Source: Phallusia mammillata
Lineage: Eukaryota
Direction of reading: 5' to 3'
Assembly (NCBI GenBank): GCA_965637545.1
Contig: OZ281494.1
Location: forward strand, 6,882,001 to 6,946,000
DNA: 64,000 nt
Shown: positions 6,802 through 64,000 of the stretch, in pieces
Layout of the letters: each line of letters opens with the position of its first letter
Numbering within the stretch: position 1 is the first letter of the stretch
The notes under the pieces: model-generated
Databases searched by the model: none
Told to the model about the DNA's origin: nothing
Seen by the model: only the letters and a program-made list of their open reading frames with translations
Translations under genes and position numbers: made by a program

Positions 6802-9329
6802 ATGATGTTTGTAAAGTTTGTACCACTCTTTTTCCTTAGTGCTCTGACAAATGCACAAACAGATGACTTGCTGGCCCAACTGCAAACTAGATGCGGTAAG
6901 TTTTTCAGAAAACCTCATGGGACATTAGTTGGTTTTGAATGTATAATAATGCTCAATGATCCGCAAACAAACTGATAAAAAGTTTATGTATACTATTACG
7001 TCTTGGTACTTTTTAGAAAGTTCAAGCTGTGAAAATACGTTAGTTGGTGGAAAAGGGTAATTGACTGTAAAACGCTTTAATTGTAATTTGCCTTTTTTAT
7101 TAGAGGATGCCTTTAATCCTTCCAACGGAGATCTATCTTGTCCAACATTGCTCTGCGAAAAGGCTTCATCCGTGACATGCAGTAAGCATACGATTTTAAC
7201 ACTTTCCAAGGTTTTGTTAAATAAAACCTTTCGGGTATTTTCACCTTGGCTCTGTGGTTAAATAATGAAACAACCGTGTATATACATCTAATAATACAAG
7301 CGTCAAAGTAAATGAAAGTGGAAAAAAATCACTAAATAAATCTATTTCTTTTCTGCAGCTTTTGGGCCAGCAATCTTAAGTGAACCTTTTTACTTCGCAA
7401 AAGGATTATGTAAGTGTCCAAACTGTGTGTGTTTTTGAATGTATCAACTGAAAATAACTATAACCAACTGTGCGATTACCACCACAATAAGCAATATTTA
7501 AGCAACTTATGTAGGGTTAAACAAATATACCACAAATAAAAAGCATTAAATCATAGCAAAAACATGTAACCTTTTTGCACAGAGGTAACCAACTATTTGT
7601 CCCATAAACATTAATTGTATATGAAGAAATCATGGCTTTAGTTGTACGTTAAAATTTTCGCTAAAATGACACTTAAACGGCAAACATAAAAGTAGAATAT
7701 GCAACAGACTTTGGTTAATTTTTAATTTGTTTTTCAGGGGATAATAACAGTATTGTGCGCAGCAACATTACAGGTAAATAATATTTAAAGTAAGCAATCA
7801 GTTAAATAATGTTGTAACTTATATCTAACTAGAGCAGGTGTAAAAAACGGTTTTGATTTCTTGCTGTTGTCGACAGTGCGTCGTTCGTTTCAGTTTGCAA
7901 GTTACAGAAGAAACGAGAGTTGTGTATTATCCTGTCTACTTGTGCATATAAATTTGATTTTTTAATTTTTATACCGCCAATTTCAACATTGATGTGCGGA
8001 TTTGTATCCGCGGGCTCAGGTTTTGAAACCGAATTGCAATACATTACTACAAGTTTTTGAAATATATTTTAAGGATTAAAAACTATTCAAACAAACAGCT
8101 CATCGAATTTTGCACAAAAAGTTTTGCCAAGTGCAATGAAATTCTGTGTTCCATCTTTACCTTGTAGAGTTTTCGTGCGGTGGAAATGAATGTTGCCTAC
8201 GTCACATTAACCCAGCAGAAGGCCTTGGGCCAGGAGACGTTTCAGTAATAATGCAGTTTATAAATGCAGGTTAGTTAAACTTTGATGCAAAAATACAAAA
8301 AGATTGCTAAAACTTTGTTTCTTTTTTTATATTTTAGTAAATGTCCCGTCAACTGACATAACTGTCAACTTTGTGAACGTCGATTACTGTAAGTACGCTT
8401 AACTAAAACCTTATCATGTTTTGTGCTTTTAAAACGTATTTTACAGAATGCTTTTGCGGTACTATTTTAAAATGAAAAAAGTTTTTTTTTATCAATGAAA
8501 TACCACACATTTTTTGCACGAACGACCGTTTGGCATTTTTTAAACTTATGTGAAATTATCAAACCATTAATTTACAGGCGTTGGTAGATACGATCCAATC
8601 AATGTGGACCCGAATAAATGCCTTAATTTAACAGCTTTGTGCAGTAAGTTTCCATTTGTGATTTTACATGAAAGTTTGGTTGTGTTTTATATCTATGCCA
8701 TAAAATCATTTTATTTTAAATGTAGAGAATTACATGTCTGAAGCTATGAACCTAACCAATCAAAATGTAGCTAATGTAGAAGGCGTAGAAGTACCACACC
8801 GAAACGTACAAGTTAACATTACACATTATTGCATACAGCCCCTTTGGTGATAACAAATGCGACAACAAGTAAAGCAACAACAATACAAGATACAATAGAA
8901 GCAACTACACCAACAGAAGTTGCAACACAACAAGCAACAACATCGGCAGATTCTACAACATTACAGGAGACATCTACAGATGTCACAACAGCACACGCGA
9001 CAACTGATGATGCACCAAAGACTTCTGCACATGCTACAACTACACTGACGACAAATGCTGATGCACAGGAGACATCTACAGATGCTACAACAGCCTATAC
9101 GACAACTGCTGATGCACAGAAGACATCTGCAGATGCTACAACAGCACAGAAAACAACTACAGATGCTACAACTGCACGGAAGACATCACAAGATGCTACA
9201 ACTCAAGCTACAACTGTGAAAGCAACAACCTCACAAAACAAGACAATAAAAGAAACAGAAAAAGAAGGCAACATCGGAAACTTGGTAAATAAGTTAATTT
9301 TGTTAACTATTGCTTTCTTTCTTGCCTGA
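6802..9329 (+). CDS. Gene A: Cys-rich cap plus mucin stalk, no GAIN or 7TM, probable GPI anchor, 322 aa
   Basis: Exons 6802-6895, 7104-7181, 7359-7409, 7738-7773, 8168-8269, 8338-8388, 8578-8643 and 8839-9329, all phase 1, total 969 nt with an open frame. Signal peptide MMFVKFVPLFFLSALTNA, a 10-Cys cap paralogous to genes B-E, a Thr-rich stalk, and C-terminus EGNIGNLVNKLILLTIAFFLA*. An alternative ending is possible: a donor at 9285 spliced to 9780 gives STPWKRK*. Confidence 0.78.
8964..9210 (+). repeat. Coding tandem repeats in the gene A stalk (3 x 51 bp, then 3 x 30 bp)
   Basis: QETSTDVTTAHATTDDA / PKTSAHATTTLTTNADA / QETSTDATTAYTTTADA, followed by QKTSADATTA / QKTTTDATTA / RKTSQDATTQ. 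Confidence 0.8.
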
Positions 9330-11100
9330 TAATAGCTTGCGAAAAGCTATGTAAATAGTACAGTGTGTATTACGATGCGCTTGTATTTACGCTTTAAAAA
9401 TTAACTGTCACCTTTAGTAAAAGTCGGAAACATATGCAAAAACAAGTTCTTTATTACAACGTATATGAAAAATATGTAAAAAAAAGCTGTCTATATGGTA
9501 TAAACAAAAGTTTGACTTTGTTTGAAATAGTCATGTTGCCTAACCTGTGAGCAGTACCAAAAACTAAGGCGTCCATGTGACATTTTTTATGAGCGGTTTC
9601 TGCTAGACGGCAGCACAGACCAAAACAAGGCGCTGTTTTATCACACGGGTTTTTACTTATTGCTGTACTCATTTGACGTAAAAAGTTTTATATTTAATTT
9701 TACTTTGTATGCAGGGTTTTGCCTAATAATATTTAACAAACTGTTAGGCTTTAAATTTCTGTATTCTGCATTTTTGTAGTCTACTCCTTGGAAACGAAAA
9801 TAAAAATGGCATATTTCATTTGACGAAAACTAATAAGGTGAAAACCGAAGTTTTTCAAACAGTCTTGTTCACATTATTTACGCCGAAACAAACGATCAAT
9901 GTTTTACAAAACATACAAATGACTCACTATGGTTTCCAACCAATTGTTTGAAACATTTTCTATCGTACGAAGACACTCATTACAAAGAGGCTTTATGTCA
10001 TGAGTGTCACTTGTTACGGGCATCGTGACCTAGCGGAAATAATGACCTAGTACGTAGAAGAATCATTAAACCGGAACACTGATGACAAATACAAGAGTAA
10101 ATGTAAGGGGTAATTTTGCGACGTACACCGTAAACAAAAGCGTTACCACGAGAAGCTTCTACGAAGAGGTCGGCAACCTTCATAACAGTTTCAATCATGC
10201 CGGATTATCCCTTTAGACTTTAGTGCAAAACATCAAATGTTGTTATCATCACTTGCTACTGAATACGATGGTCGTAAACAACAACACCTCACTGAAATGA
10301 ATTGATGCGGATAATTCAGTTTCGGTTGGAAAACCGATATGGTGTAAGTGTAACAAAGAGCACTTTTAAGGGCACAACGAAATTAACTATTTAACTTGGA
10401 CATAATTTAAAAGTTTTGATTAGGTGTAGTCACAAATTCGCCAAAACTGGCTTGGCACATAAACCAAATAAGCGAAATCCAACAATCAATCAAGCGAAAA
10501 GCAATGTTTTGTGGGGCAAAAGCAATAACTTTTTACGATTTCGCAGTCACAAACTATGTAAAAGGTGTTCGGTGTTAATTTTATTTCAGTAAATAACGAT
10601 AATCTCAACGTAAAAGAGCCCGATAGCTGAAGACAAGGAAAAACTGGTGTACATGAAGACACAGACCCTAATATAAACTTTTCTATTTTTGCAACATTTT
10701 GCTGCAAAGTTCCACATCCTATCAAGTTACGTCTATGCAAAGTCACATGAAAAAAACCCACGTTCTAAAACCGTCTGGCGAAATTATGGAAGCTCCCAGA
10801 TACACGCTTCACTGAACGTGGGTCGCTCTACCTGCTAAGTTTAGCTTCAGGAATTTTTAAAGTTGTTGATTCAAACACAAACCGATTGACGGCAAACTAA
10901 TAAGTGCTTTGCAGAGTCAAAAATTTACATATGCAACACAACGGTTTTCATGCCATTCCCCCAAAAATATTACAAGGCTCAAAAAGGTAACTTTGGAGAG
11001 TCATAGTTTTTTTTTTAAATCAAAAGAGGAAAAATTAGTTTTGTCGAAACCCTGTAAGGTTGCAATAACAATTATTCAGTCAAAAAACCTCTTTTGTTAA

Positions 11101-17068: not shown

Positions 17069-20000
17069 ATGCTTTCAAAAATATTATCACTGCTTTTATT
17101 AATTGCCGCAACGGATGCACAATCGGATGAATTACTTCTTTGGCAGCGATTAAGATGCAGTAAGAAACATCTAAATACAAGTTAAATGTCATAAACATAA
17201 TATATCTTTGTAGTTTATTAACAGCATTTCATGAGTGAATAACAAGCTTGTAAAAACAAGTTTTTTTGCAAAATGTATACTATTTGCTTATCATTTTAAT
17301 GTACCTGTAACGTTTTTCAACCATTAGGTGTTTTGTGTATTTATTTAGTAAATTTTCCTTTTCTGTGCGTAAAACAAAGTTAAAACTAGAATAGTGGTTT
17401 TCCTATATATTGCCGGGTTATATATACTACATCATATTTAATGATGTATCACATATTCCATTTACTATATTCATAATGGATATATATTTGGCACCTACAT
17501 TTGATTGGGTCCCTATCTTTTTCCTGGCACTTTATAACATAATTGTTTCTGCAAGCATAATCTAATGGGTCCTCACCACTAGCGTATTTAGGGGCGGGGG
17601 GACAAGGTGCCTATATAGACAAAATATATAAAGACAAAAACAATATGTGTCCCCTTCCCATAATGAAGTGAGAAAATTAGACCCAAATGCTGTGAGACTT
17701 GTTCGCCTAACTCAGGGGTCGCCAACCCGCGGCTCCGGAGCCGCATGCGGCTCTTTGATCCCTCTGATACGGCTCAGTTTTTGAATTTACCAAATGTTGT
17801 ACATTTGAATAAAAATTATGTGACGATTATGCCGAACACAAAAGTCGAACACGAAAATTGAAGTGCAGTAGCATGACTGTACTCGCTTGTTGCAGTTACC
17901 TGCAAGCCCATCTCTATACCACCAAACGTGAAGTCTGAAAGAGGCAAACTGGCGGTGCGCAGGTTAATACGCAATATGAGACAATACTGTTTTTGTTTGC
18001 AGTGTGTGTGCGCGCGTAACAATAGCTGTTTGTTAATTGTTACGTAACAAACGCGTTAACAAAGGAATACAAATCTGCAAAAACAGAATATGCAACGCTA
18101 CGTAAAGTTGTTTTCTCTGCTGACGAGACTAGTATACCAGTGTGTCTAATATGCATTGAAACACTAGCTAACAACAAAAAGTCGAATGTCATAAGACTAA
18201 AAACGTTTTGCATTTTATTTTAAATTTTAAAACGACTTTGTGGCTCCCAGTGTTTTTTTCTACGTGAAACTGGTCCGAGTGGCTCTTTGAGTAGTAAAGG
18301 TTGGCGACCCCTGGCCTAACTGATTTGGAATTTGTTTAGGCATATTAAGCAGTCTTACAGCGGATGTGACAAATTGTTCAACATTACTGTGCGAAAAAAA
18401 TTCTTCGGAAGTGACGTGCGGTAAGTACATCGCTAAACCTTATCATGTGTTGGATAATGTTTTGATTTCCTTTGTTGTATGATGAAACTTAAAAACGCAA
18501 AAAAAACATGCATTCACTTGAAACAAATTCATGATTGATGTGAATAATATACGTAACCATTTTTTGTGTTTTTTACAGTTTTTGCGCCTGTAATTCCATT
18601 GGATCGATTTCGTACAAACATCAGTAAGTCAAAAACTTCAACTTATATCATATAACGTGCAAGGGATTAAATTGCAAACATCAGTCATACATTTATGGTT
18701 ACTAAACGATTACAAAAATGTCTTTAAAAAAACGAAGCCAATAAATAACATAAAATTCATTTTGAAACAGAAAAATGTAGAACAGAAGAAATATTTAAAA
18801 CAACTTTTTTAGATGCCTCTCTTCCAACATGTTACCGCGGAAGCGGAAATTGTAAGTACAAAATTTATTTGTTTTAAATTTCAAAATTTTATCGGACAAA
18901 CATCACTTTTGACAAAAACATAAATACTGCAGTATTTATTATTCGTAAAAGTGAATTTCCAGTAGAAAATCCATTATATAATGATTTATAAGAGATGCAA
19001 TTGTTACGTAAATCCAGTTAGTTTTTAATCTACATTTTGTTTTTTACTCATTTTCATTTTCGGGTTATTAATAACAAACTTTTGTTTTGCAAACTTTCAC
19101 TGAAGTTTACAGAGAAAAAACTACGCTCAAAAATCAGAGCAACGAGTTTCTTTCACGCGAGGGTAAAGCGATCATTACTGATAATTTGTGTGTTTTAAAA
19201 ACTAGTAACTTGGACCGATATATTTGTGTCCAAATGTAGGTTTATACCAGTTTTTTTTAACAAAAGTTTGTTTTAAACACCTTTTTTGTCAAAAAAAGAA
19301 GAAAAAACTGCAGTAGAGAGTCGTTTTAGTAATACGTTTTTTTAAATCAACGACTTCTCTAACGTACACGATAGCTTCAATGGAAAAAGTCAAAAAAACA
19401 CTAAATTTCACAAAGCGAGAACTTTGTTTGGGTACCCGCACGTTAAAGCAGCGATTTTTCCGCCCCCTACCTGCAATCGGAAATAAGTCTGGTAATTGCT
19501 TGGTACCTCAACGATTACGCTGAAATTTTAAATAAAGATCAAGAATTATTTTAAAAGTTTACCTATATAACATTTTTTGCATTAATTTTTTATTTTGACC
19601 TGTGAAAACAAAACAAACCTAAAAGGATAAAATTGCTGAATCAAGCCACCAACAGCCAAACTATGAAACCTATGTGTCACACACTATAGTGTATTTTAAA
19701 CCTGAAGTTTAAAGTACTTTCCATTGACCAAACATAACGAAGACTGTACGAAAACAATTGGTGGAAGAGGACCCACAATAATGTTGGGATTAATTGTTAA
19801 TATTGAATTTAAATTTAAACTAAGCTACTGCGGTTTTGAGACGGCCTGTGGCAAACGCGACTGTGTGACGACTTGGGGTATTTAATTCTCCCCCTTGCTT
19901 TGTAGGGGATACCGATACGATTAACGGAGCTAACATTACAGGTACTTTCTTGGTTATATATGTAAATGATGTGTTTAATAAAATAAAATCAAAACGCTTA

Positions 20001-23000
20001 ATTTTTGCAGCGTCTTCGTGCAAGGAACTGGATTGTTGCTTAACGCATATAAACTCGCCCAGTGATACGGAATATGATCTTTCCGCAGTTTCAGTAAACA
20101 TGATATTCATAAACGGCACAGGTTGGTAAACCTTTCAAAGAACAAACTCTATACACTTGCGCCTGCTCTATGTCATGCGATACTTGGTGCAGGATAATGT
20201 TCTAACTTGCATATATTACAGAAACAGTATCACAGGAATCAAATCTAAGTTGATTTTTTTCAGACCTAACAAAAAATGTTGCATTTAAGCTCAGTTTTTT
20301 ATGGCGAAACCTATACTCACCATTTAAATCAAGTTTTCCTAAAGGACGTTTGCTCTGTTTCAAAGCAAAATACGGAAACAACTTAAACAAACATGTCTCC
20401 CGTGTTTTATAACATGTGGTGTTATTGTGCTTGCATTTCAACAAAAGTTTTAACTTGAAGTTGTAACAAAAACGTTAAAAAAACATTTTTCCACACGAAG
20501 GTAACATACATTATATTAAAGTGTTTTTTAACTTTTTATAGAAATTGATCCAATCTTGGTTGGTCCGATCAATAATGTGAGAATCATCATTGTAAACTTC
20601 GACTATTGTAAGTAAACGCAAGCAAAACAACGTCATTTTGGTTGTGAAAAAGTTATTGTGTAATAGTTTTATTGTCAGACAGATCCAAAACTTTTGGTTG
20701 GCGTTAGCATTAGCATATTACAGTAAAAAAAACAGAATGTAGAACACTAACTAAGACAAGTTTCTTCAACAGGTCTTAGAGTTTCTACCGATTCACTTAA
20801 TGTATACCCAAACGACTGCCTCAATCTAAAAGATCTTTGTGGTAAGTTTCAATGTGTGCAAATATGCATGAAGCTTTTTTTTCCTATTTCTGTTGCACGT
20901 CGACATTTTTTTGACATGGAATCCCAATTAAATGACTTCGTTGCATGAAAGCTACAAGTATAGTATCACTCACTAGAAGACAATAGCTATGTAACTCTAG
21001 CAGTCCGCACTAGCGTAATGCAGCCAAACGTTACTCAACCTTGCACACAGCCTCTTTATCGACTCCAACAACAAGAGCTACAACAAGCCAAGCAACACCA
21101 GTAGCAACAAAAACAGAAGCCATGACACCACAAGCTACAACTGCGCTAACTCCAACAACACAAGCTACAACACAAGAAGCAACAACAATAGTAGCTACAA
21201 CGACAATCGCTGCAACAACAGAAGCCCTGACACCACAAGCTACAACTGTTCGAACTCCAATAAAGCAAGCTACAACAGTGCATATTTCAACCGCAGAAAC
21301 TACAAATGCAGAAACTTCGACTATAGTGGTTACAACATCACTTGCTGCAACAACACAAGTTACAGCGACAACGCAGGAAGCTACAACAACAATGCAGACT
21401 ATGGCACCACAGACCACGACAATGCAGACTACAGAAGTGAAAACTACAACCGAGAAAGCCACAACATCTAAGGCATCAGCATCACAAACTACACAAGACG
21501 AAACAACACAAGAACAAGGTCAAGAAGTAACTAATAGCGACATGGTAGTTGGTAGCGGATTAAACACAACTGTAGAAATGTCTACAACGCCACAGCCTGA
21601 CCCAACAGCAACACAAGCTGGTAACATCTCTGTGACAAACACTGTGACATCATCAGCACTTACGTTACTTATGCAAAACACAAACACTGTCACTGTACGC
21701 CAAATTACGTCTGGTATTACGAGCATGAGCATGGTTAATTTTGTTTCTAATTTAGCTAACACAACTACAAATGAGACACCCACAACCGCAGAAATACCGA
21801 CCAAAACCACTGTGACTGCGGAATCCACGACATCACATATAACAACACAAACGACTACAGCACCCACAGACAAAGAAACAACCACAGACAACGTAATAAT
21901 CTCAACACAAACAGAGAAAACAACTCAAGCGGCTACAATTGAAAAGACAACTACCCTAAACAAGGAAACAACTATGGAAATAACCACGGTACCCACAACT
22001 ACAGAAACAACCACGCTACTTACAACTGCAGATACAACGACTACACCCACAACTGCAGATACAACGACTGCAACCACAAGTGCGGAAACAACAACAGCAT
22101 TAACAATTGCAGAAACGACGACAGCACCTACAACCACAGAAGACTTAATTACAGAAACAATCACGCCAATTACATCTGCAGAAATAACAACTGCACCCAC
22201 AACCACAGAAACAACGACAGCAGACAAAACTACAGCTCTCACAATAGCAGAAACAACCACACCACTCATAACTGCAGAAACAACCACACTATCCAAAACC
22301 ACAGTAACATCCACAACACTCACAACTGCAGAAACAACCACACCATCCAAAACTACAGAAACAACGACCGCACCCACAACTACAGTATCAACCACAGCAC
22401 TCATAACCGCAGAAACAACCACAGCACCCACAACTATAGAAACAACCGAATCACCCACAACGCCAGAAACATCAATTTCATCCACCGCAAAGATCAACAA
22501 CGAAACAGAAAACATCACAATCGCAGTAATTCCCAATAACCCTGAAACAATAACAACCATTGGAATAACACAATCACGCATGATGTTGCCTGTTTCCACA
22601 GCTGCTGTCGCAACATCGACTGTGAGCACAATGAGTGCAGTAGCCGCTACACAATCAACAACTACAGTTTCATCAACAGCTTCTCGTGTGCCCGACAGCG
22701 ATATCTCAGATGTTGTCGAAAACGAGGCGATTGGGTCAATCCGCTCCATGCTTGGTTTGGTTGAATCCAGTGAAGTATTCGTGACCAGAGACGTCAGCAC
22801 GCCGATAGAAGGAAGATTTTCACAAGCTTACTTCTCTGGGGCAACGGTTAATCCCTCCGCCGTCGAAAGCCTGCTTCAAGTCGCAGTTGTTTCATCACAA
22901 TTCGATATCACTGCAGATGTAAGTGAGTTTGCTTCTGCCGAGGAAGCAGATGGACTCAGTACACAAGCTTTACCTTTCTCCGGTTCACCAGCCCTTAGCG

Positions 23001-26000
23001 TAACCGCTGTAGACACACAATCTCGCAGTATAGTCGAAGCCAAACTCAGTTACTCGATTCAAATCAACGCTACTGCTGATAGTGGTCAGACGGTCGCAAA
23101 TCTTGCCAGGACAAATAATAACAGCGGGACGTACGCGGTGACAAGAATCAACAAAGTAGAAACAAGATGCGGATTTTTCAACGCAACCCAAAGGAGGTTT
23201 TCGTCAAACGGTTGCACATTGCTTCCAAGCAACACAAGCGAAGAAGTTTCGTGCTTCTGTAACCACACAACGTTGTTTGCTGTCCTGCTCTCTGTTCAAA
23301 CCTACGAGGTCCCATCGACGGTCAAGGTAGGACTTAAGTAGCTTTAGTGAGATTTAAAGAAATAGAAATACGGGGACAATAAAACTATACAGCTGTTTAC
23401 AAGACGGGACTACGCTAAATCGATAAAGTAAAGTTTGTTGACAGTTTGGCTCACCATAAAGTTTGGACTATAAATATTTCATACAATTTACACCGCAACA
23501 ATGTGTTTGCTAAATACCTAATAGCGTCAAAAAATTTTATCAGAAAGCGCATAATTATGCTGCAAAAACAAAACAAGTTTTTTAATTGAAATTCGTGTTC
23601 CTAGTCGAACAAATCAAAATCTTATTCAATCTAGGGGTAAGCGATAATAGTAATGAACAAAAATCGAAAAACGAATAATATGTCGTACGCTGCAAGCATA
23701 TAGTTGTACGCTGCAAGCAGATTTAGAATTGCACACGGCTTTCTGTTACGTGAAATCTATTGACAGCAAGCTCGGGACAGACTATTTCCGGGGATTGAGC
23801 TGCCTTTGCTTATAACGTGGGGCCATTTGCGCGACTTCTTTGTAAACCCAACGTCTTGACGTTTTGTTTTTTAAAATTTCTTGCATGAAAACAAAAAATC
23901 AACCATTAGGCTATATTCAAAAAGATTGGCCTCGTTTTAGCAAATTGGGGCTGGCCCGTTCTTTTAACACTAAGTTACCTCTGAGTCAAATGTGACATCA
24001 TAAAAGAGTGGTTGTTACGTTGTGCATACGCATCAGGTTGAATACAACGTCCCACGCATACCATGGTGCAAGAGCGACTTTCTAATGTTTGTAAAGCACG
24101 AAACCCATTGTTTCATTTAAAGTACCTAAGTTATTGGGTTATCCTTTGGAATTTTTTTATTTACAAAAAATGGAACAAATTTTTTTATGAAAACGCCATA
24201 CAACAATGACAATAAATTTGACCCTTTCTATCAAAAACTGGACATTCATGTGTGTAAAACCCCAACTAAAAGGGGACTGACAGTTTTATTGAAAGGCACC
24301 CGAATATTTGTGGAAAACCCCGCTGCGCCACAATGGCTTGTTTCGGGAGAAACACGGCACCTTTTTTCCGACCCGCTTCTAACAGGTTTGCCCTGGGAGC
24401 AATGCCCCTTGTGACGTCAATGGCGTGTCTTATATCGCGTTACGCATGACTAGACTTCACTGCCGCGTCCCAAGCGCTGGAGTCTCAAGGGTTGGGTAGC
24501 GAAGCTTTGGAGCCCAGACCACATCTCGCCGCATACTAAATATTTGAAGCACAGAGACTCGTGGAAACAATTCAAGTTGCGTTTTTAACCTTTTTAGTGT
24601 CATAAAAGACGAGTAAGACGAAACGAGGGGCTTGCTTTACAACTGTAAAATTTTCGTATCGTGTCCCAACGGTTAATGAAACCCAAAACGACACGAACTT
24701 TATTTTTAGTGGACGAAATTCCAACCGGGTTATTTGTGCAACAAAATGCTAAAGCGGGCCATTGCCATAGGTTTAACAACACAGTATTTGCAAAACCTTG
24801 TGTGTTCGGTGTTAAAGGCGTCGTTAGGTTTGTTGGTACATTACAAACGACTCAAAATGAACAACGGTGTTTAGCTTAATAGGATGAATATTGCTGGAAC
24901 AACTGATTTCGGTCTGATGTACGAAAGCCGCTTGCATCTCTTGACCAAAAGTCGATTTTGATGTACCGTAGCCGCTTTCCATTCTTAACTAAAAGTCGAT
25001 TTTGATGTAGCAAAGTCGCTCTTAACTAAAACTCTCTTCACAGTTGCTGTCATACATCACCGAGTCGATCAGCATATTGTGTCTCATCATCACCATTGCC
25101 ATACTTATGACAGTCCGGAAGAAAGTGAGAAGTGACAGAACGGTTGTGCAAATCAACCTCTCGGTCGCCCTCCTGTGTTTGCACATTTTTAACCTCTTCC
25201 AGGACTTGGCGGTCGAGGACAAGCGAGCGTGCGAGTTCGTTACCGTGACAACGCACTTTTTTCTGTTGGCCTCGGGTAGGTTCCGTTATTATTATGCACG
25301 CCAGTGATATTTTGACATGGTCACCAGAAATGACAAACATCGACTGTGACTTTCAATGCGTGAAAACGGTCGGTGTTTTAGGGACTCGCAACACGCCCTT
25401 TGATTGCAGTTATGGGAAAAAAAGCTAAGTTAGCTGTGACTATCAACTTTCAATGCATAAAACCAAATTAGCTTTCAAATGTTAGAATGACGTTGGCTGA
25501 CTAGCGATTTTCCAACTAAGGTGCATGGACGCCTATAAGAGACCTGCATGTTGTGTTGGCTTGGAAGTCCTCAAATCCGAAAACCAAAAAGTAAACAATA
25601 CATAAACTGGCTTTATCCGCAATAGTGGTAGTTTAATAGAATGGGCCGTACATTTCGTCACACATTGTCTTTTAGACCGATTTTTACAAAACCTCTTATG
25701 TGATGTTATTGTAAAGAATTTCTAGACATGCATTTGCATTCCGATTGTCAGCTAGCATAATTCATGTCGTAAAATTCCTACTGTTCACTTCAAAACAAAG
25801 AAAACTAAGTATGTAAAACGTGACTTTGCACTGTCAAACACTGCAGTTGTATTGCTAAGCTCTGCAGTCGTCGACGAATAGGGATTGCTATTATATTTGA
25901 CAACTTTAAAGTATAATTATGCAACAGGAACTTGGATGCTTTGGGAAGGCCTGACACTTTTCATCAAAACCACCGACAAAATACTTTCGCTGAACAAGAA

Positions 26001-27967: not shown

Positions 27968-28143
27968 CAGTGGTCGGTAACCACCGGTCCGCGAGGAGTT
28001 CGTTACAGGGCCCTATAATTTTGCAGGGTAAATGCTATAAAACAGTTTGCCAATGTATCCCGGGTAGTTTTTTGAAGACCGGTCCGCGAATAAATTTCAC
28101 TTTTAAAAACGGTCCGCAGTGCAAAAAAGGTTGCCGACCCCTG
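27968..28143. mobile_element. hAT MITE, 176 bp, copy 1 only
   Basis: TIRs CAGTGGTCGGTAACC / GGTTGCCGACCCCTG; TSD ATTTACAT. The empty site in copy 2 is at ~33829-33836. Confidence 0.85.
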
Positions 28144-42600: not shown

Positions 42601-45600
42601 CAACGTCAGTAACGCAGTTTAATGCAACTACAAGCCAACCTACAACAAATCCATTGTCAGTAGCAACTTTAACCCTGCAGTCTGTATCTTCAATATTTTA
42701 CAGTACAACTGCAAGTACACGTCCATTAGCACCAACAAGTCTTAGCGCCGTTAGCAGATCAGTTAACGTAACGAGGTCAGAATTCATCAAACAGGCGGTC
42801 CAGGCTGCTAATAACTCAACCGCTACTGAAGTAAACCTGCTCAATTTGACAACAGTGGGAAACAAAACTATTGTCACAAGCAACAACACCAGTCCAGTGC
42901 AACTGAAACTTTCCCAAACAAGCGTAAATGGACTTTCACCACAGTTCGGAGGATCATGGGATGTTGTGATTGTCGTAGTGGAGTTTAAGCTACCTCAGAA
43001 TGTACAAACATTTACAGCACAAACTTCCCATAGCGGAATAAAAACCGAAGTTTTGCCATTCCCTGGTGCCCCAACAATCAGCATAACTGTCATTGATGCA
43101 AATTCACACAGTAAGGTCAGTGCAAAACTGAACTACGTTATATCGTTGCAAAACACCACCTCCCAAGTACAAGCCATGCTCAACCAAATAATCAACAACA
43201 AAAGCAGTAACGGGAAGTATGGAGTAACCAGAATCAACAAGATAGAAACCAAATGTGGATTTTTTGATACAACGCAGCAGAGGTTTTCAACCAGAGGTTG
43301 CTCACTGCTTGCAAGCAACTCAAGCCAGGTTTCATGTTTCTGCAACCACACAACCTTGTTTGCGGCTTTGCTTTCCGTTCAGTCCTTTCCCATACCGTCA
43401 GAAGTTGTGGTAAGCACATAATGTAATTAAGTTCTTATATTATTTGTCAAGTATTTCCAAATATACATTAGGCATAAATAGATTGCAAAGGTGAGTACTA
43501 TTCACCGGCAAGTTTAAATAATTCACTACTCCAGCCTCCATAAGTGCACAAAATTAAGCTTACAATTATAGCAGTATGTTTATAAATAAGGCAATAAAAA
43601 CCAACATGTATTTAAGTGTTTGAAAAGTTTTATCATGATTAAACAGTGGCTATTATTCGCAAGGCTGCTTGGCTGCGTTTTTTCATTGTTTACGCTTCAA
43701 CTACATACTGGCGTTAAAATATCAGGAAGGAAAAGCAGCAGCACAGTAACGCTTTCGGTGTACAACACATCAATAACAAACACTTTACGTAGAGCAACTA
43801 CCCGGAACTTTTGATGTTAATGAAGCTCAAGCGGCAAGCGTCGTTACAAACAACTCATTTAAAAAATGACACAAAACTGATCATACCGTTGTGCTTTAGG
43901 GCTACACTGTCGCACTCTTAATCTTTAGGTCTCTGTTCTGCAATAAAAGAAATTACATTAGTGGTACAGTCGCTGCATAACAAAATATTACAACCAAATG
44001 CAACACAATCAGCCACAGTTTTATTGTAACTGCATGAAAACATTTTTATCATACTGCATGAAAAATACGATTTAATGAAATCGTTATAAAATTCGATTTG
44101 AAACATATGTGTAAACCAGTGATTCTCAAACTGTGTGCCGCCGCACACTAGTGTGTCGTGAGAGATTTCCAAGTGTGCCGCGAAATATTCTCTATTTTAA
44201 AGTGCAAACATTCCCTGGTATTTTAGGACATGATGACGAAATACTGGTGCACATGACAACGTTTCAAAGCTCATACTTTTGTTATTGGTAACAAAAAGCG
44301 TTCTTACCCACCACAGTACTCTTGAAAGTTAACATTATATGATCAAATTCTGTTATGTTTACCTGCGAAGTGTGGCGCGGAAGGAAATTTTAGTTCTTTA
44401 AGGCGCCGCATGCTTAAAAAGTTTGAGAACCACTGGTGTAAACGTATTTTTATTTTTATTTGCAGTTTCTCTCCTACATTACTGAAGCAATCAGTATCTC
44501 TTGCCTCATTATCACAATATCAATACTGATGACAGTCAGAAAGAAAGTGAGAAGTGACAGGACAGTTGTTCAGATCAACCTCTCCGTCGCCCTCCTGTGT
44601 TTTCACATCCTAAATCTTGCCAACGTGTGGGCGTTAGTGGACAAACGTCTGTGTGAAACAATGACCATTCTCACTCACTTCTTCTTGCTTGCAACAGGTA
44701 AGCTCAGAAGATGTATGTCAGAAGTAAAGTAATTCATCTCCGTGGTTTTGCAGTTCACCGAATAGCACATAAATACCAGACGAATTTACCCAATGCATGT
44801 TGGAACGTTTAAATTGTTGGAATTTGAAATTTAAACAGTTTTTGGTGCAAGTTGCTGTCCCTGTTCGGCCTGCGTGAGGTCAAGTAAATTAAAATATAAA
44901 TGAGAAAAACAGGCCTGTTTAAGCTGTGTATGAAAACGGCAGTGTTGCTTTCCATTTGAAAACAATGCCACTTTTTCCATATTTTACGGTAGTGACGCAC
45001 GTCCGTATCCGAACAGGTTGTCTTACCCTAAATGTCTAAATAAAATTAATACGGGGTAAAATTAAGTTCAAGATATTGTTTTATCGGCCCTCCAACACAA
45101 TCCAGTTTTCTTATGTGGCCCCTATTAAAAATAATTGCCCACCCCTGATCTAAAATTATATACACGCAGGTACATGGATGCTTTTGGAGGGCATCACTCT
45201 GTACTTGAAGACTACTGATCGAATCCTGACCTTGAACAAGAAGAGTCCTCGCAAAGTAGCGGGCACCAAGTTGGCATTGGGTTGGGGAATTCCTTTGCTG
45301 ATCGTGCTACTAGCCAGCGCCATTGGTTTCCCCACGAACCGCTACATGGATTCGTACGTCAACAATTACTACAGATGCTGGGTACGTGTGGGTTTTGTAA
45401 GGGAAATGACTTCGAGCTGTTACAGGATTACGATTGTGGTTGGCCCAATTTTTCACACAGTATGAATAATAAAGAAAACTCTATACAGAAATGTATGACA
45501 ACAAGTGACAATTAGATGCCAAAAGCTAAAGAATGCCCTAAAGTTGACAAAACTTTGATGAAAAAGTGATTAAACGTTCCGTAAAACTAAATCACATTTT

Positions 45601-46776
45601 GCAAACGAATAGAGTAAAATTGAATACAGTAAACTTTCCAATAATAAAAAAAATCAAACAAGGCAAACGCAATTAGAAGACCTCAGCTTATTTAAGAGAT
45701 AACAGTAACAAAACATCCAGTACCACCTCTTTTAACGTTAGTCATGAATGATCAAATGTCTCCTGTCATAGGTGGGAACACAAAACAAATTCCTGCTCGG
45801 GTCCGTTATTATTCCCATGGTAGTATTTTACGCCACGAATGTCGTCATCGCCATCAAGGTTATCTGGTTTGTCCACAAGCTGAAAAGCAGTGAGCTGAAG
45901 CCCTCCGCGTCCCGATCGTCGTCGGCTAACGCTGAGAATATCGGCGCAGCAGTGAAAGTCTTTCTTATGTTGTTTCCGGTTTTGGGGCTTCCCCTGTTCT
46001 TTGCATTCATGACAAGTAAGTCACGTGGTTTGATGAAATAGTTTGCTTTGGCTTGGAAGCGAATCTGTCGATCAGGTTTTGATCTTAAACCGGACCCTTA
46101 AACTCACCTAGCCGTTGCAGATTGTTTAAGTGCAATGTTGGTGAAAAAACATGTGTTCCGTGCTTGCACAAATAAAACCCTAGAGAATTAAATTAAAAAC
46201 ACATATATACCTTGCCATATGGAAATGCTTACTGCTGACCGACTATTTCAGTGTGAAGCACTCATATGCGTAGCATCATATTGGGATTCCTATCACATAT
46301 TTTACACCCTGAGATTTGTCACAGATTAAATTTACCTTGTCTTGCAAAAAAGTAGAGCAAAATGACACGACCCAAAACAATTTAACTTCCGCAAGGCTAT
46401 TAGCTTCCCAACTCATCAACAGTGCAATATTTATCATCTGTTTAAGCCTTCAGTCCTTAACCTCACTGTTTTGTTCATTGAAAGTTAGCAAGCAAAAGTA
46501 ATTACAGCGCTTAACTTTTTTTAGTCTCAATTAAACACGTTCCTCTTTGCAGGCATTGAGCCGTACGAAGCATCAGTGGTGTTCATGTACATCAACGTCA
46601 TCCTCAATGGGTTGCAAGGTTTATTTCTATTGTTTGTGTACTGTGTGCTGTGTAGCGAGGTTCGTGAAGCAGCTGGGAGGTCGTTTGAGAGAATTCGGCT
46701 ACGGTACTCAAAGGAGGAATCGACCAAACTTCACACAAGGTCATCCCATAACGCCCCTTCAGTGGCGATGACCTGA
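39612..46776 (+). CDS. Gene C: adhesion GPCR (cap, ~100-aa stalk, GAIN/GPS, 7TM), 787 aa
   Basis: Exons 39612-39723, 40362-40424, 40620-40673, 41024-41059, 41269-41367, 41796-41837, 42116-42208, 42457-43409, 44466-44697, 45170-45381, 45772-46015 and 46553-46776; total 2364 nt, open. GPS reads CGFF...FSTRGC...CFCNHTTLFAALL. Confidence 0.9.
44117..44435. mobile_element. hAT MITE, 319 bp, ending 30 nt before a gene C acceptor
   Basis: TIRs CAGTGATTCTCAAACT / AGTTTGAGAACCACTG; perfect TSD GTGTAAAC. Confidence 0.88.
45060..45147. mobile_element. Truncated hAT MITE (right end only)
   Basis: It ends in TTGCCCACCCCTG with internal CGGCCC/GTGGCCC motifs like those of 46797-47144. I found no left TIR or TSD. 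Confidence 0.45.
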
Positions 46777-46796
46777 TAGAAACGAAGCCTTTAGAT

Positions 46797-60400: not shown

Positions 60401-63400
60401 AGGTTAAAATGTAGTAAGGAATTATATTTAGCTTCGGTCGAAAGTCGGACAACTCTACAAGGGAATTTCAAAACGACCATTCTGTACGTCAAAAAGTTTG
60501 AACACCACTGCCCTTGGCCTGGGAAATAATCTATGCGTCCTAAAATGTGTCGATAGACCGTTTAGTGGCCTTTATAAACAAAAAGGTTCACCACCCCTGG
60601 CCCAAACTGTTGCACTGCCAGCCAACTAACAGTAGGCAGTGTTTACATTGCATTAAATTTGAACGTTAATAAAATACGATGTAGTAGCCGTGTTTGTCAC
60701 TACCACCCACTTGTAGCCGACATGTCTTGTTGATTGCACATTTAACAACTTACGTTTATGGGCGTTTTGCCGCAAACAAAGTCATGCTGCAAAACACGCT
60801 GGCTTGTATAGGGATCCCGTTAAAACAAAACAATAAAAACTTTCGCTTTTCAAATTGGTACACAACGTTAAAAAAACAGCAAAAATCAGCGCTCGCTTGA
60901 AACAAATGCAATCGGCCTGAGTAAGACAAACCGAAAAACGCAATAAGGCGTATAACATTAACAAATAAAAGAGTGCAAAACCCGATCGTTCAAATTATGT
61001 GTACAATAAATATATGTTACTTTAAAAATAAAATTTCGCTTTGACTGAAGTGTAAACACGGCTCTTGCTGATCCAACCTTTAACAAATGACACATGACAC
61101 TTTAAGCTACTATAGGGCTGTTTTATTTCAAAGAAATTTAAGAGAATCCTTAGCACGAAATAGAGAACATAAGTCTCATATTATTTACGCTTGAAAAGTA
61201 TGTTGTATTCATATTTATATTTGTTTTACAGTTTCACAAAAAGTCAAGATTTTCATCCAACACTATGAAGCATGTAAGTGTATGAAATGTAAAATGGCCA
61301 GCACAGTTAACTACGTATCGTTTGCATTCTTTAAAAGTAAAAACATGTGAGTAATATTACCAGCTTAAAAATAATCTATTAATGTACGAAGGTGTTCCTG
61401 CTTCTCATGACCCGTATCCAGCAGCAACATACCTAAACAATAATCCAACACAATGTCTCAACCTTTCCCACTATTGCAGTAAGTATCAATTTCTTGTATA
61501 GTTACCATGGTATTAATGGTGTTCAAATTCTGATGAGACAGATTTATTGTAGTTTAGGCTATTTGATTTTTATTAGGAATTACACTTACAATAAAAAAAA
61601 TTTTTTTGCCCGATATTAGTCCATAACCAATCTTTGTTAGGTTATAAACTATACGTGACAATTTTTAAAAATTTCGTCAACACTAATTTGGATATTTAAT
61701 AAAGGTCCTGTATGGCTTTTTTATTTTATTTCAAATCTTTTTAGCAATCTTTACCTTTTTATATTGTAGCGTTTTGGCGCATAGTTCTTTAACACACAGT
61801 ACATTCTAGTACTGTACTGATGTTATTTTGTTTTGTTTTCCAATCACGAAAAATCTTCTGAATATTTCTATTTGAATACCGAATTTTGTCACATATATTC
61901 CACAAATTAGTCAAGCCTCCCCCCACAGATATTCAGATAACGTTTTTCACTCAAGATCCATAAAACCTGATAATAAACACAAACACGCCTTTGCAAATCA
62001 TTTTATATGGGTTCAAGTAAAAACCCCAGACAGTGCTTAAGTAGATTTGTTCAATAAAAATAGGATGTATAAATTAGCTATAGCACAGATACAAAAAAAA
62101 TGTTGACATTTGTAGACACGACAAGTACGACAACGGCTGTGACGACAAGTATGGCTACTACTACTCAATTAACGACAGATCTAACAACCACGATGCCGCT
62201 TTCGACCTCAGACTCAACAGCTTTTATTACATCTATGCACCCAGCAACAGGTTAGAAAAGTTATTTGCCAATTTGACAGAGTGAATTACCAAATAGTTTT
62301 TTATATTGATTATAATTTACTTGTTCGTTACTAACTCATTAAACAGTTTAATCGTAGTACAATTTATCAAAGCAGGTGTGAGAAACCTATTTTACCGTGG
62401 GCCGCATAATTTGCACAATGTTATAATATTACCGAACCGAGGGTCCACAAAAAATACTTCGCATCAAAAAATGTTGGATATAAATCGACAAAAAATGACT
62501 AAGGAAAATGCTTATACATGAACATGCGGGTCCCAGAAATAGTCAATCAGGTCGCAGGTGGCTCACGGGCTGTGTTCCCTAATCCTTCCAAATTGTGCAA
62601 AAACTTGAATACATAAACCGGTATTTATAAAACAACCCAGTTAAAGCAGTGGTTCTCAAACATTATTTTTTTAAAACGGTCCCTTTGTTATTATTTCGAG
62701 GGCTCGCAGTCCTAAATGAGAATAAGCATAAATGTGAATTTCAGACAAACGAAAGTTGATTGCAAGATTTTAGCTAGTAAATGCAACATTGCGCATAATA
62801 ATGACCCAAAGACAGCTTGTGACATCACAGGCAAAAAAAGCATTGCAATTGTGCGCGAACAATTGCATTTTTGATAGTTGTCATTCAATAAAGGCTATTG
62901 TTTAGCAATCGACAGTCGATTCTCAATTCGAATTTGATTGAAATTTATTCAGTGGCACAAACTGACGCTACATAAAATTATAGGATTACTTCAACCTTTT
63001 CGTGTCCGCCAAAAATTGCCTCATAGGCCCCTTAAGGACCGCAGACCCAGTTTAAAAACCGCAGAGTAAAAGCATAAGTTTGCTATAAGTCTTAATCACA
63101 CGGCGGGAAGTAAACATAGCTAAACTGCATGTTCCAGGTGAGCCAGAGCTGCAAGGCTATATCCAATCCGAGTTGATTGAAATCGAATTGTCCGGAAACC
63201 AAGGGGAAGGAAAACTGTCCGAAATATCATTTAATGTGGAAACCACAGATCCGAACATTGGTTCCGAAGTAATGAATGCGAGTTTAAGAGCTAACTCATC
63301 GATAGTTAAGATAATCGCCGCCCAGCTGCAGGCAAATGGTGATTTGTCACAATATACTAAAGGTACACCCAATGGACACTACACAAATAAGTTGCAACCA

Positions 63401-64000
63401 ATACCAGGGACTCCAACTCTTAACTTGACAGTTACGAGTGAAAACAACACCAGCAGATTGCAGGCAAAGATAAGTTTCGTCATCAGTCTTGAAGATGTAG
63501 ATACTTCTGCATACGTTTTGTCTATCATTAGCTCCAACAGCATTGGATATGCAATAACGTGGCTTAAACAAGTCAATGAAGCCTGTGGTTTCTTTGACAC
63601 AACTAAGCAACAATTTAGCACCGATGGCTGCAGTACAACTTCAACCACCACAACCAGTATCACATGCTTTTGCAACCACACCACCGTGTTTGCTGTCTTG
63701 CTTTCAGTGCAATCGTATGAAATCCCATCACCAGTTGTGGTAAGTCACTGGTCCAAAGTTGATGTAATACACAATGTTCCTAATAGTGGATATACAAGTT
63801 AACATGTTACTGCCAGGCACATTGTATGAAAAAGTATTTATTTTCGAGTAGATTTTATTGCAAAGCAACCGTTTTTAAAAATCACGTAGAAAATAGGGAA
63901 ACTTTTTTCATAAGAAATAGTATTATATGTAGCAGCCAAAAGTATGCCTTGAAAATGTTTTTTTTATTTTTTAGTTGCTCTCATACATCACTGAATCCAT
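57427..64000 (+). CDS. Gene E: adhesion GPCR, 5' part only (7TM runs off the window)
   Basis: Exons 57427-57526, 57950-58015, 59156-59209, 59390-59425, 59500-59604, 61232-61273, 61392-61478, 62116-62250, 63138-63739 and 63975 onward (LLSYITES...). GPS reads CGFF...FSTDGC...CFCNHTTVFAVLL. Confidence 0.86.
58077..58650. mobile_element. hAT MITE, 574 bp, gene E intron 2
   Basis: Perfect 15-bp TIRs CAGTGGTCTTCAACC / GGTTGAAGACCACTG; TSD ATCTAGTA/ACCTAGTA. Confidence 0.88.
58673..58803 (+). mobile_element. tRNA-derived SINE, copy 3, full length with TSD
   Basis: GGGCAGAAACTTGGCCGAACGG...GGGTTCGAACCCCGTG followed by ~A24; TSD ATTGAACAATAT / ATTGAACGATAT. Confidence 0.85.
60040..60598. mobile_element. 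Nested or rearranged hAT MITE fragments
   Basis: A TIR pair CAGCGGTTTTCAAAC (60162) / GTTTGAACACCACTG (60510) without a matching TSD, plus a second right end GGTTCACCACCCCTG (~60598). Confidence 0.45.
62647..63064. mobile_element. hAT MITE, 418 bp; same family as 34982-35393
   Basis: TIRs CAGTGGTTCTCAAAC / GTTTAAAAACCGCAG; TSD AGTTAAAG/AGTAAAAG. The interior is collinear with 34982-35393. Confidence 0.82.

What the first reader, a model, noticed from the sequence alone, without database searches (positions are those of the whole stretch)
6802..64000. Tandem aGPCR array with divergent ectodomains on a conserved signalling chassis
Seen: at least four aGPCRs (B-E) plus a 7TM-less paralogue (A) lie head-to-tail. 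Their caps share little beyond Cys, FAP, W and CLNL, while the 7TM exons remain easily alignable, about 90% at DNA level over part of TM3-TM4 of B vs C. Established: local expansion with variable ectodomains and constant signalling parts is typical of immune, allorecognition and environmental-sensing receptor families. Inference: this may be a lineage-specific diversified recognition system built on aGPCRs.
Basis: partly seen in the sequence, partly recalled or inferred. Interest (0 to 1): 0.85.

Follow-up and report, generated by a model that had tools for sequence, protein, structure and literature searches.

The report
Tandem ascidian adhesion-GPCR gene cluster
This stretch of a sea-squirt genome carries a real head-to-tail cluster of related adhesion-type receptor genes that share an undescribed cysteine-rich tip. 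The cluster looks like an old, ordinary gene-family expansion under purifying selection, not a hypervariable immune or self-recognition system.

Summary
I built intact GT-AG gene models on the + strand:
- B, C and D are full adhesion GPCRs.
- E has the same layout but is cut by the window end.
- A has the cap and mucin stalk only, with a hydrophobic C-terminal tail.
- There is also a dead cap fragment (1-430) and B', a partial copy of B's TM3-TM7 exons.

Each receptor reads: signal peptide, ~140-aa 10-Cys cap (seven small phase-1 exons), Thr/Ser mucin stalk (~15 to ~590 aa), compact GAIN/GPS, 7TM. Pairwise identity is 27-46% in the cap, 30-43% in GAIN and 63-77% in the 7TM.

The "diversified recognition system" reading is not supported:
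- The cap is no more divergent than GAIN.
- The cap exists in Ciona's single-copy counterpart, where it is as conserved as the 7TM.
- Synonymous sites between paralogues are saturated, so the duplications are old, and no ω exceeds 1.
- In gene D, 8 of the 9 listed differences from other individuals in cap exons e2 and e7 are synonymous.

Ascidian-specific, GPS-only adhesion GPCRs were described in 2008, and tandem pairs also occur in Clavelina and Styela.

New here: the cap domain, and B' under constraint (ω 0.12) despite a lost splice acceptor. Unresolved: ~10% divergence from other individuals, and expression of B-E.

The parts
1..430 (+). Dead cap fragment. Cap exon 1 is fused directly to cap exon 5 (exons 2-4 and their introns are missing). 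It carries an in-frame TAG and one extra G, and the start of the next intron is retained.
   Evidence: 75-78% DNA identity to 6650-6896 and 8167-8365. The alignment shows the precise junction, the stop and the frameshift. tblastn with gene A hits 158-338.
6802..9329 (+). Gene A (323 aa): signal peptide, 10-Cys cap (exons 6802-6895, 7104-7181, 7359-7409, 7738-7773, 8168-8269, 8338-8388, 8578-8643), then a Thr-rich mucin exon 8839-9329 that ends in a hydrophobic tail at the extreme C-terminus. No GAIN, no 7TM.
   Evidence: Model with GT-AG introns and no stops. Tandem 51/102-nt repeats in the mucin part. No Pfam family. Its cap is 46% identical to B's.
17069..20841 (+). Gene B cap exons (8 exons; the FAP exon is split in two).
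21051..23326 (+). Gene B large exon: a mucin stalk of about 590 aa (27-nt repeats at 21977-22471) followed by GAIN/GPS (from about 22640).
   Evidence: Pfam GPS 3.3e-08. Tandem repeats. AlphaFold model of 22640-23326 with pLDDT 78 matches the GAIN domains of CD97, BAI2, BAI3, CELSR1 and latrophilin-1.
25044..27523 (+). Gene B 7TM exons: TM1-2 25044-25275, TM3-4 25928-26145, TM5 26449-26722, TM6-7 plus tail 27249-27523.
   Evidence: Pfam 7tm_2 on the TM3-4 piece. Splice sites. Model.
25943..38281 (+). Two units of a roughly 6-kb tandem duplication (25943-31836 and 31835-38281). The breakpoint lies 15 nt inside B's TM3-4 exon.
   Evidence: blastn self-comparison gives 85-98.5% identity in blocks. 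Breakpoint context.
31835..33387 (+). B': a copy of B's TM3(partial)-TM4, TM5 and TM6-7/tail exons (31835-32037, 32331-32604, 33113-33387). It has open reading frames and kept its internal splice sites, but lost the native acceptor and the first 5 codons.
   Evidence: Exons 92-96% identical against introns at 80%. dS 0.16, dN 0.02, ω 0.12.
39612..46776 (+). Gene C (788 aa): cap exons 39612-42208, mucin plus GAIN exon 42457-43409, 7TM exons 44466-44697, 45170-45381, 45772-46015, 46553-46776.
50378..55417 (+). Gene D (826 aa): cap exons 50378-52672, short Thr/Ser stalk plus GAIN exon 52903-53492, 7TM exons 53710-53941, 54110-54568, 54723-55417 (191-aa tail). The second GPS cysteine is replaced by Arg. 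The intron 53942-54109 is in frame and free of stops.
   Evidence: RNA contigs of a paralogue are spliced at the same junctions, after 53491 and 54568|54723.
57427..63739 (+). Gene E (5' part only): cap exons 57427-61478, mucin exon 62116-62250, GAIN/GPS exon 63138-63739. The 7TM exons lie beyond the window.
   Evidence: Pfam GPS 5e-09. Model. Closest to Phallusia proteins P0007/P0138.

Best explanation
What it is. This is a tandem cluster of paralogous adhesion GPCR genes from a tunicate-specific subfamily. It lies in an ascidian of the family Ascidiidae, most likely Phallusia mammillata or a close relative.

Architecture. Each full gene encodes:
- a signal peptide;
- a cap of about 140 aa with 10 cysteines, which matches no Pfam family or solved structure;
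- a heavily O-glycosylatable Thr/Ser stalk of very different length (about 15 aa in D, about 590 aa in B);
- a compact GAIN domain whose GPS reads CxCNHT/T;
- a class-B2 7TM domain.

Origin. The cluster arose by old tandem duplications of one ancestral gene. In the only Ciona locus examined, the counterpart has no paralogue within 10 kb. Partial duplications produced three more elements:
- A, made from the 5' part, which is probably GPI-anchored;
- B', made from the 3' part;
- a dead cap fragment.

Mechanism (inferred, not shown). The cap binds an unknown partner. The mucin stalk sets its reach and transmits force. The GAIN domain and its tethered agonist (T-x-F-A-V-L-L) then activate the 7TM domain, as in other adhesion GPCRs. 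The paralogues have diverged in cap surface and stalk length under overall purifying selection, which is ordinary sub- or neo-functionalisation.
For: Domains and fold:
- GPS and 7tm_2 are found by Pfam.
- The GAIN fold is predicted at pLDDT 78 and matches solved GAIN domains.
- The gene models are intact.

Family placement:
- The 7TM search found only 137 relatives with E <= 0.001 among 1.84 billion representatives. All 20 top hits whose names I looked up and that carry a name are tunicate proteins.
- The nearest named vertebrate hits are ADGRD2, at 27-32% identity.
- The tree puts B-E and Phallusia P0138/P0007 in one clade (100/100), with a Phallusia protein and then Clavelina and Ciona proteins as sisters.
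- The Ciona locus has cap exons directly upstream of the GAIN/7TM gene and is flanked by unrelated genes.
- The cap HMM hits Ciona P0142 and Phallusia P0007/P0138.

Selection:
- dS between paralogues is saturated. dN is 0.5-0.8 in the cap, 0.5-0.86 in GAIN and 0.15-0.27 in the 7TM, and no ω exceeds 0.42.
- Listed differences in D's cap exons e2 and e7 are 8 synonymous to 1 non-synonymous.
- B versus B' gives ω 0.12.

Context:
- Same-strand neighbouring family members with different N-termini also occur in Clavelina and Styela.
- Kamesh et al. 2008 (PMC2396169) list 24 'unclassified' Ciona adhesion GPCRs, 21 of them with GPS only, and call them probably ascidian-specific.
Against: - No transcript of B, C, D or E was seen. 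Two RNA runs of the same species label hold only a paralogue's spliced contigs over gene D.
- D lacks one of the four GPS cysteines, so it may be impaired.
- The GPS has Thr instead of the canonical Leu before the cleavage point. Autoproteolysis is therefore uncertain.
- Ligand, G-protein coupling and tissue are all unknown.
- The ω estimates between paralogues rest on saturated synonymous sites.
- The between-individual count uses only the 40 best-supported of 734 differences.
Confidence: 0.8

Rival explanations
1. Diversified recognition system. The caps would be a variable recognition repertoire for immunity, allorecognition or gamete self/non-self discrimination, wired to a constant 7TM signalling unit, with A acting as a decoy or co-receptor.
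For: - The ectodomains diverge 3-5 times faster than the 7TM in amino-acid terms.
- There is a 7TM-less cap-plus-mucin paralogue.
- The expansion is lineage-restricted.
- DNA contigs of other individuals with the same species label are only about 85-95% identical across gene D, and more than one haplotype appears per run.
- Ascidians do use a GPS-containing, N-terminally hypervariable receptor (s-Themis) for self-sterility (PMC7018956).
Against: - The cap is no more divergent than GAIN.
- No ω exceeds 0.42.
- The duplicates are old, not a fast birth-and-death family.
- The listed differences in D's cap exons are almost all synonymous.
- The Ciona cap is mostly as conserved as the 7TM between two Ciona forms.
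- No linked partner or ligand gene was found in the window.
- Only four to six copies are known.
- The ~10% divergence also affects introns and the 7TM, so it may be genome-wide or reflect a cryptic species.
Confidence: 0.08
2. Stalk-length series for mechanosensing. The functionally relevant difference between paralogues would be the mucin stalk (about 15, 45, 110 and 590 aa), which tunes reach and force transmission to the GAIN domain. Cap divergence would be secondary drift on a conserved scaffold.
For: - Stalk length differs about 40-fold, while the cap keeps all ten Cys and its exon structure.
- B's stalk is built from young 27-nt repeats.
- Force-dependent activation through GAIN is an established mode for adhesion GPCRs (general knowledge; PMC3321182 for the GAIN domain).
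Against: There are no functional data. Cap residues outside the Cys framework differ too much (27-46% identity) to assume the paralogues share a ligand. Mucin repeat length is often polymorphic and need not be selected.
Confidence: 0.1
3. Decaying cluster. Most copies would be untranscribed relics of past duplications, with only one or two genes still functional.
For: - There is a dead cap fragment.
- B' lost its acceptor.
- D lost a GPS cysteine.
- No RNA run holds gene D's words.
Against: - All five gene models keep open frames through 8-13 exons with canonical splice sites, although dS exceeds 1 between them. Unconstrained copies of that age would be riddled with stops.
- 7TM ω is 0.08-0.15.
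- Even B' shows ω 0.12.
- Related Phallusia paralogues exist as proteins that I take to be cDNA-derived (that provenance is my own knowledge, not in the tool output), and one is present as spliced RNA contigs.
Confidence: 0.04

Closest known systems
'Unclassified Adhesion' GPCRs of Ciona (Kamesh, Aradhyam and Manoj 2008, PMC2396169)
   Same: These are ascidian adhesion GPCRs with only a GPS recognisable in the N-terminus and no clear vertebrate orthologue. They form paralogous groups created by duplication. The Ciona protein XP_026694790.1 (P0142) has the same cap, short mucin, GAIN (CFCNHTT) and 7TM layout and falls next to the window clade.
   Different: The paper did not describe the cap domain. 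In the passages I read I saw no tandem arrangement of the adhesion genes. The Ciona counterpart has no paralogue within 10 kb of flank, whereas here there are at least four full copies plus partial copies in 64 kb.
Vertebrate ADGRD subfamily (ADGRD1/GPR133, ADGRD2/GPR144)
   Same: These are the nearest named vertebrate hits to the 7TM/GAIN region (27-32% identity). Databases label the Phallusia and Ciona relatives 'ADGRD1-like'.
   Different: ADGRD proteins carry an N-terminal pentraxin/laminin-G domain (Pfam PF00354/PF13385). The cap shows no such match. The tunicate proteins form their own clade (100/99). The GPS reads HT/T rather than HL/T.
s-Themis / v-Themis self-sterility loci of Ciona (PMC7018956)
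   Same: An ascidian receptor with a GPS motif, a variable N-terminal region and duplicated loci.
   Different: s-Themis is a polycystin-1-like protein (REJ, GPS, LH2, PKD channel), not a 7tm_2 receptor. Its hypervariable region is highly multi-allelic, and its ligand gene lies inside its first intron. None of these features was found here.
Tandem family members in other tunicates (Clavelina lepadiformis LOC143463218 and its neighbour; Styela clava LOC120333789 and its downstream neighbour)
   Same: Same-strand neighbouring genes of the same tunicate 7TM family, with differing N-termini (none recognised in Clavelina; VWA plus EGF_CA in Styela).
   Different: These are pairs rather than an array of four or more, and the cap HMM does not hit them.

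Membership tests
Adhesion GPCR (class B2) | Secretin-type seven-transmembrane domain (Pfam 7tm_2) | tested here: met
   7tm_2 scores 2.3e-19 on D's TM1-5 ORF and 7.8e-07 on B's TM3-4 exon. B, C and D assemble to a full TM1-TM7 region. E's 7TM lies outside the window.
Adhesion GPCR (class B2) | GPS motif inside a GAIN domain immediately before TM1 | tested here: met
   Pfam GPS is found in B, C, D and E. The AlphaFold model of B's 229 aa before TM1 (pLDDT 78, pTM 0.72) matches the GAIN domains of CD97, BAI2, BAI3, CELSR1 and latrophilin-1 (Foldseek probability 0.95-1.00, E 2.6e-5 to 1e-2, TM about 0.4). The domain is compact, about 190-200 aa with one preceding helix.
Adhesion GPCR (class B2) | Canonical autoproteolysis triad His-Leu | Thr/Ser | tested here: not met
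   All copies and their tunicate relatives read C-x-C-N-H-T-T (N, H, T, T are invariant or nearly so in alignment A3). The residue before the scissile bond is Thr, not Leu, and N-H-T is a glycosylation sequon. Whether cleavage occurs cannot be tested with these tools.
Adhesion GPCR (class B2) | Tethered-agonist (Stachel) sequence T-x-F-A-V-L-M-like after the GPS | tested here: met
   T-[LV]-F-A-[VA]-L-L-S-V-Q is present in B-E.
ADGRD subfamily | N-terminal pentraxin / laminin-G-like domain and orthology of the 7TM domain | tested here: not met
   No Pfam match in the caps' Ciona and Phallusia representatives, even at E <= 5. The tunicate clade is separate from vertebrate ADGRD2 in the tree. 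A language-model lead to beta-sandwich lectin-like families scored only 0.68.
Ascidian 'unclassified, GPS-only' adhesion GPCRs (Kamesh 2008) | Only GPS recognisable in the N-terminus, and no unambiguous vertebrate orthologue | tested here: met
   and the paper text. Identity with particular ci01... gene models of that paper was not checked.
Polymorphic allorecognition / self-sterility receptors (s-Themis, FuHC type) | Allelic hypervariability concentrated in the recognition domain | tested here: not met
   Gene D compared with contigs of other individuals: cap exons e2 and e7 show 8 synonymous and 1 non-synonymous listed differences. The GAIN exon differs by 11-15%, 7TM exons by 5-9%, and the cap-plus-intron region by 11-16%. 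Only the 40 best-supported of 734 differences were visible, so the test is weak.
Polymorphic allorecognition / self-sterility receptors (s-Themis, FuHC type) | Tightly linked polymorphic partner (ligand) gene | tested here: inconclusive
   No other protein-coding gene was recognised in the window (ORF list; ten intergenic ORFs without a Pfam family). Small-exon genes could be missed.
Polymorphic allorecognition / self-sterility receptors (s-Themis, FuHC type) | Expression in gametes, blood cells or contact epithelia | not testable with these tools
   Run identities and tissues are coded. Only one read-laying run was available.

The most novel reading that the evidence does not exclude
The cluster could be a polymorphic recognition locus after all. 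The roughly 10% divergence between this haplotype and the contigs of other individuals, with several haplotypes per run, would then be locus-specific long-lived allelic variation. On this reading the membrane-anchored, 7TM-less cap protein A would act as a partner or decoy for the receptors. B/B' would provide two alternative 7TM back halves for one ectodomain.
Probability: 0.07. Interest if true: 0.8.

Novelty: new member of a known kind. Interest (0 to 1): 0.35.

Why it matters
It gives a cleanly annotated example of how tunicates build their large, vertebrate-unrelated adhesion GPCR repertoire. The route is tandem and partial duplication of one gene that carries a modular ectodomain encoded by symmetric phase-1 exons.

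It defines a cysteine-rich N-terminal domain, conserved between Ciona and Phallusia-like ascidians, that matches no Pfam family or solved-structure sequence.

It flags two testable oddities. One is a GPS that reads HT/T throughout the tunicate relatives aligned here. The other is a 5'-truncated half-receptor copy that is still under purifying selection.

It does not open an immune or allorecognition question unless population data show cap-specific diversity.

Tried and rejected
- Word-indexed protein searches found nothing, both with B's GAIN region and with the Ciona cap.
- A fragment alignment of the cap exons stacked all Cys-containing pieces on the same columns, so I discarded it.
- A single-sequence AlphaFold model of the Ciona cap reached only pLDDT 37, too poor for any fold search.
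- The cap has no relatives among solved-structure sequences and no Pfam family.
- The atlas feature hits to FAMeT, galectin and LamG-like families scored 0.68 or lower, and structure TM scores were below 0.4. These are leads only.
- Rfam at gathering threshold found nothing in the window.
- RNA-run word searches for gene D gave 0.00 shares.
- I first read Phallusia P0138/P0007 as orthologues of E from another species. RNA contigs from runs with the window's species label translate to P0138/P0001 peptides. They are therefore more likely further paralogues in the same nominal species. The species name itself stays an inference because names are coded.

Full report
**What is in the window**

The window has 35-42% G+C and no N runs. 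A self-comparison at DNA and protein level shows one set of exon-sized similarities recurring on the + strand at about 7-9, 17-27, 32-33, 40-47, 50-55 and 57-64 kb. Pfam finds the GPS motif four times and 7tm_2 in the exons that follow.

I built gene models by hand from stop-free segments, paralogue similarity and splice-site logic. All have canonical GT-AG introns and no internal stop:

| Gene | Coordinates | Length | Content |
|---|---|---|---|
| A | 6802-9329 | 323 aa | cap and mucin stalk only |
| B | 17069-27523 | 1271 aa | full receptor |
| C | 39612-46776 | 788 aa | full receptor |
| D | 50378-55417 | 826 aa | full receptor |
| E | 57427-63739 | cut by window end | cap, stalk, GAIN/GPS |

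No further copies are hidden in the window apart from a fragment at 158-338. Ten intergenic ORFs have no Pfam family, and Rfam finds nothing at gathering threshold.

**Architecture**

Every gene starts with a signal-peptide exon followed by six small exons (seven in B), all in phase 1. Together they encode a cap of about 140 aa with ten conserved cysteines.
- FAP (FGP in A) opens the third exon.
- W opens the 36-nt fourth exon.
- CLNL (CLDL in D) lies in the seventh exon.

A Thr/Ser-rich stalk follows, with very different lengths:
- about 150 aa in A;
- about 590 aa in B, which contains 27-nt tandem repeats;
- about 110 aa in C;
- about 15 aa in D;
- about 45 aa in E.

In B-E the same exon, or the next one, continues into a compact GAIN domain. 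An AlphaFold model of B's last 229 residues before TM1, made with a 16-row alignment, reached pLDDT 78 and pTM 0.72. Its best structural matches are the GAIN domains of CD97, BAI2, BAI3, CELSR1 and latrophilin-1.

The GPS reads C-x-C-N-H-T-T, followed by [LV]-F-A-[VA]-L-L. This is a good tethered-agonist sequence, but Thr stands where the canonical cleavage triad has Leu. The same variant is present in all the tunicate relatives aligned. D has Arg in place of the second GPS cysteine.

A ends after its stalk in a short hydrophobic tail at the very C-terminus.

**Divergence by domain**

| Measure (between paralogues) | Cap | C-terminal GAIN | 7TM |
|---|---|---|---|
| Pairwise identity | 27-46% | 30-43% | 63-77% |
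| dN | 0.5-0.8 | 0.5-0.86 | 0.15-0.27 |
| Rough ω | up to 0.42 | about 0.3 | 0.08-0.15 |

Synonymous sites are saturated (pS about 0.6-0.85). The duplications are therefore old, and the ω values are rough.

However, the cap is not special relative to GAIN, and nothing points to positive selection. B and C share a 100-nt stretch of 91% identity in TM4 despite this saturation, which looks like local gene conversion.

**Partial copies**

- *Tandem duplication and B'.* A roughly 6-kb tandem duplication (25943-31836 versus 31835-38281) begins 15 nt inside B's TM3-4 exon. The second unit therefore carries a copy (B') of the TM3-TM7 exons without its native acceptor.
  - B and B' exons are 92-96% identical, their introns only 80%, and the 3' UTR 96.8%.
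  - dS is 0.16, dN is 0.02 and ω is 0.12.
  - If B' had been free of constraint, the combined ω should be near 0.5. B' has therefore been constrained for most of its life.
  - An in-frame, phase-compatible AG lies 22 nt upstream of the homology. Using it would replace the conserved TWMLW start of TM3 with charged residues. Whether B' serves as an alternative back half is open.
- *Dead fragment.* At 1-430 there is a dead cap fragment in which exon 1 is joined exactly to exon 5. It has a TAG and a 1-nt frameshift.

**Relatives and organism**

An exhaustive HMMER search with D's TM1-5 found only 137 proteins with E <= 0.001 among 1.84 billion representatives. All 20 top hits whose names I looked up and that carry a name are tunicate proteins, from Phallusia mammillata, Ciona, Clavelina and Styela. 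The nearest named vertebrate hits are ADGRD2, at 27-32% identity.

In a maximum-likelihood tree, B-E and Phallusia P0138/P0007 form one clade (100/100) shaped ((B,C),(D,(E,P0138,P0007))). Its sisters are Phallusia P0005, then Clavelina P0002 plus Ciona P0142/P0003.

An HMM of the five caps hits Phallusia P0007/P0138 and Ciona P0142 (XP_026694790.1). P0142 has the same cap, mucin, GAIN and 7TM layout.

In a Ciona assembly the cap exons lie just upstream of the GAIN/7TM gene, where they are called as a separate 118-aa gene. The locus is flanked by DnaJ and PITPNM-like genes, with no paralogue within 10 kb on either side. Between the two Ciona forms, four of five cap pieces are 94-95% identical and one is 63%, against 89-95% for the 7TM.

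Clavelina and Styela also have same-strand neighbouring family members with other N-termini.

**Reads**

Names are coded.
- Two 2024 runs hold 0.91-0.93 of gene D's words.
- Older DNA runs of the same species label hold 0.02-0.03.
- RNA runs hold 0.00.

Laid at 80% likeness or more, the older DNA runs hold contigs collinear with D. They differ by 11-15% in the GAIN exon, 5-9% in 7TM exons and 11-16% across the cap exons and introns, with more than one haplotype. Counts of the listed differences that fall in coding sequence:

| Region of D | Synonymous | Non-synonymous |
|---|---|---|
| Cap exons e2 and e7 | 8 | 1 |
| N-terminal leader | 3 | 7 |
| 7TM | 3 | 2 |

The two RNA runs hold only pieces under 90% alike. 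These pieces are spliced at my predicted junctions, and their flanking letters translate to peptides of Phallusia mammillata P0138/P0001. A paralogue outside the window is therefore transcribed, gene D was not seen, and the species is probably P. mammillata or a sibling lineage.

**Comparison with what is known**

- Kamesh et al. 2008 (PMC2396169) reported 30 adhesion GPCRs in Ciona. Twenty-four were 'unclassified' and 21 had only a GPS in the N-terminus. They interpreted these as ascidian-specific or fast-evolving.
- Scholz et al. 2019 (PMC6900090) stress that invertebrate adhesion GPCRs need new subfamilies.
- The present cluster belongs to that known kind.
It is polycystin-like, multi-allelic and nested with its ligand gene. 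None of that is seen here.

**Verdict**

The lineage-restricted expansion is supported. The 'diversified recognition system' is not supported by any test I could run, although population and expression data are still missing.

Points of modest novelty:
- the unannotated 10-Cys cap domain, conserved from Ciona to this ascidian;
- the family-wide HT/T GPS;
- the constrained half-copy B'.

Noticed in passing
window 1-430: A dead cap fragment in which cap exon 1 is joined exactly to cap exon 5, so exons 2-4 and their introns are gone, while the following intron is retained. It has an in-frame TAG and one extra G. Because all cap exons are phase 1, this could derive from an exon-skipped transcript or from a precise deletion.
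   Followed up: partly
window 31790-33387 (B') versus 25928-27523 (B): The 5'-truncated copy of B's TM3-TM7 exons shows ω 0.12. Its exons are 92-96% identical to B's, while the introns are only 80% identical, although the native acceptor was lost. A fortuitous in-frame AG lies 22 nt upstream. It might be an alternative 3' half of gene B.
   Followed up: partly
window 25943-38281: Identity along the two duplicated units is very uneven: 80% in the two introns, 94-97% in the 3' UTR and just beyond it, and 98.5% at 31047-31836 versus 37493-38281. This suggests later gene conversion or unequal exchange in parts of the unit.
   Followed up: no
window 53418-53492 (gene D GPS): D reads S-G-R-S where B, C and E have a cysteine (G-C). 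One of the four GPS cysteines is therefore missing, by a single-base difference, in an otherwise intact gene.
   Followed up: no
window 53942-54109: D's intron between the TM1-2 and TM3 exons is 168 nt long, in frame and free of stops. TM1-TM5 therefore reads as one 295-aa ORF, and retaining the intron would insert 56 residues.
   Followed up: no
window 50300-55500: DNA contigs from older runs with the same species label are collinear with gene D but only about 85-95% identical, with several haplotypes. I could not tell whether this is locus-specific or genome-wide (a cryptic lineage).
   Followed up: partly
window 26040-26140 versus 45280-45380 (approximate): B and C are 91% identical over the best 100 nt of the TM3-4 exon, although their synonymous sites are otherwise saturated. 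This probably reflects a short gene-conversion tract.
   Followed up: no
window 4932-5039, 34662-34786, 58674-58798; also 34982-35391 versus 62647-63062: Short interspersed repeats (about 110 nt at 89-90% identity, and about 410 nt at 74%) are shared between intergenic DNA, the region downstream of B' and an intron of gene E. They are probably transposon remnants.
   Followed up: no
L001 7256-9575 (Ciona assembly GCA_018327825.2): The cap exons of the Ciona counterpart are annotated as a separate 118-aa gene upstream of the 596-aa GPS/7TM gene, which looks like a split gene model.
   Followed up: partly
Rfam at gathering threshold reports no family anywhere in the window. This does not exclude a minimal motif.
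   Followed up: partly
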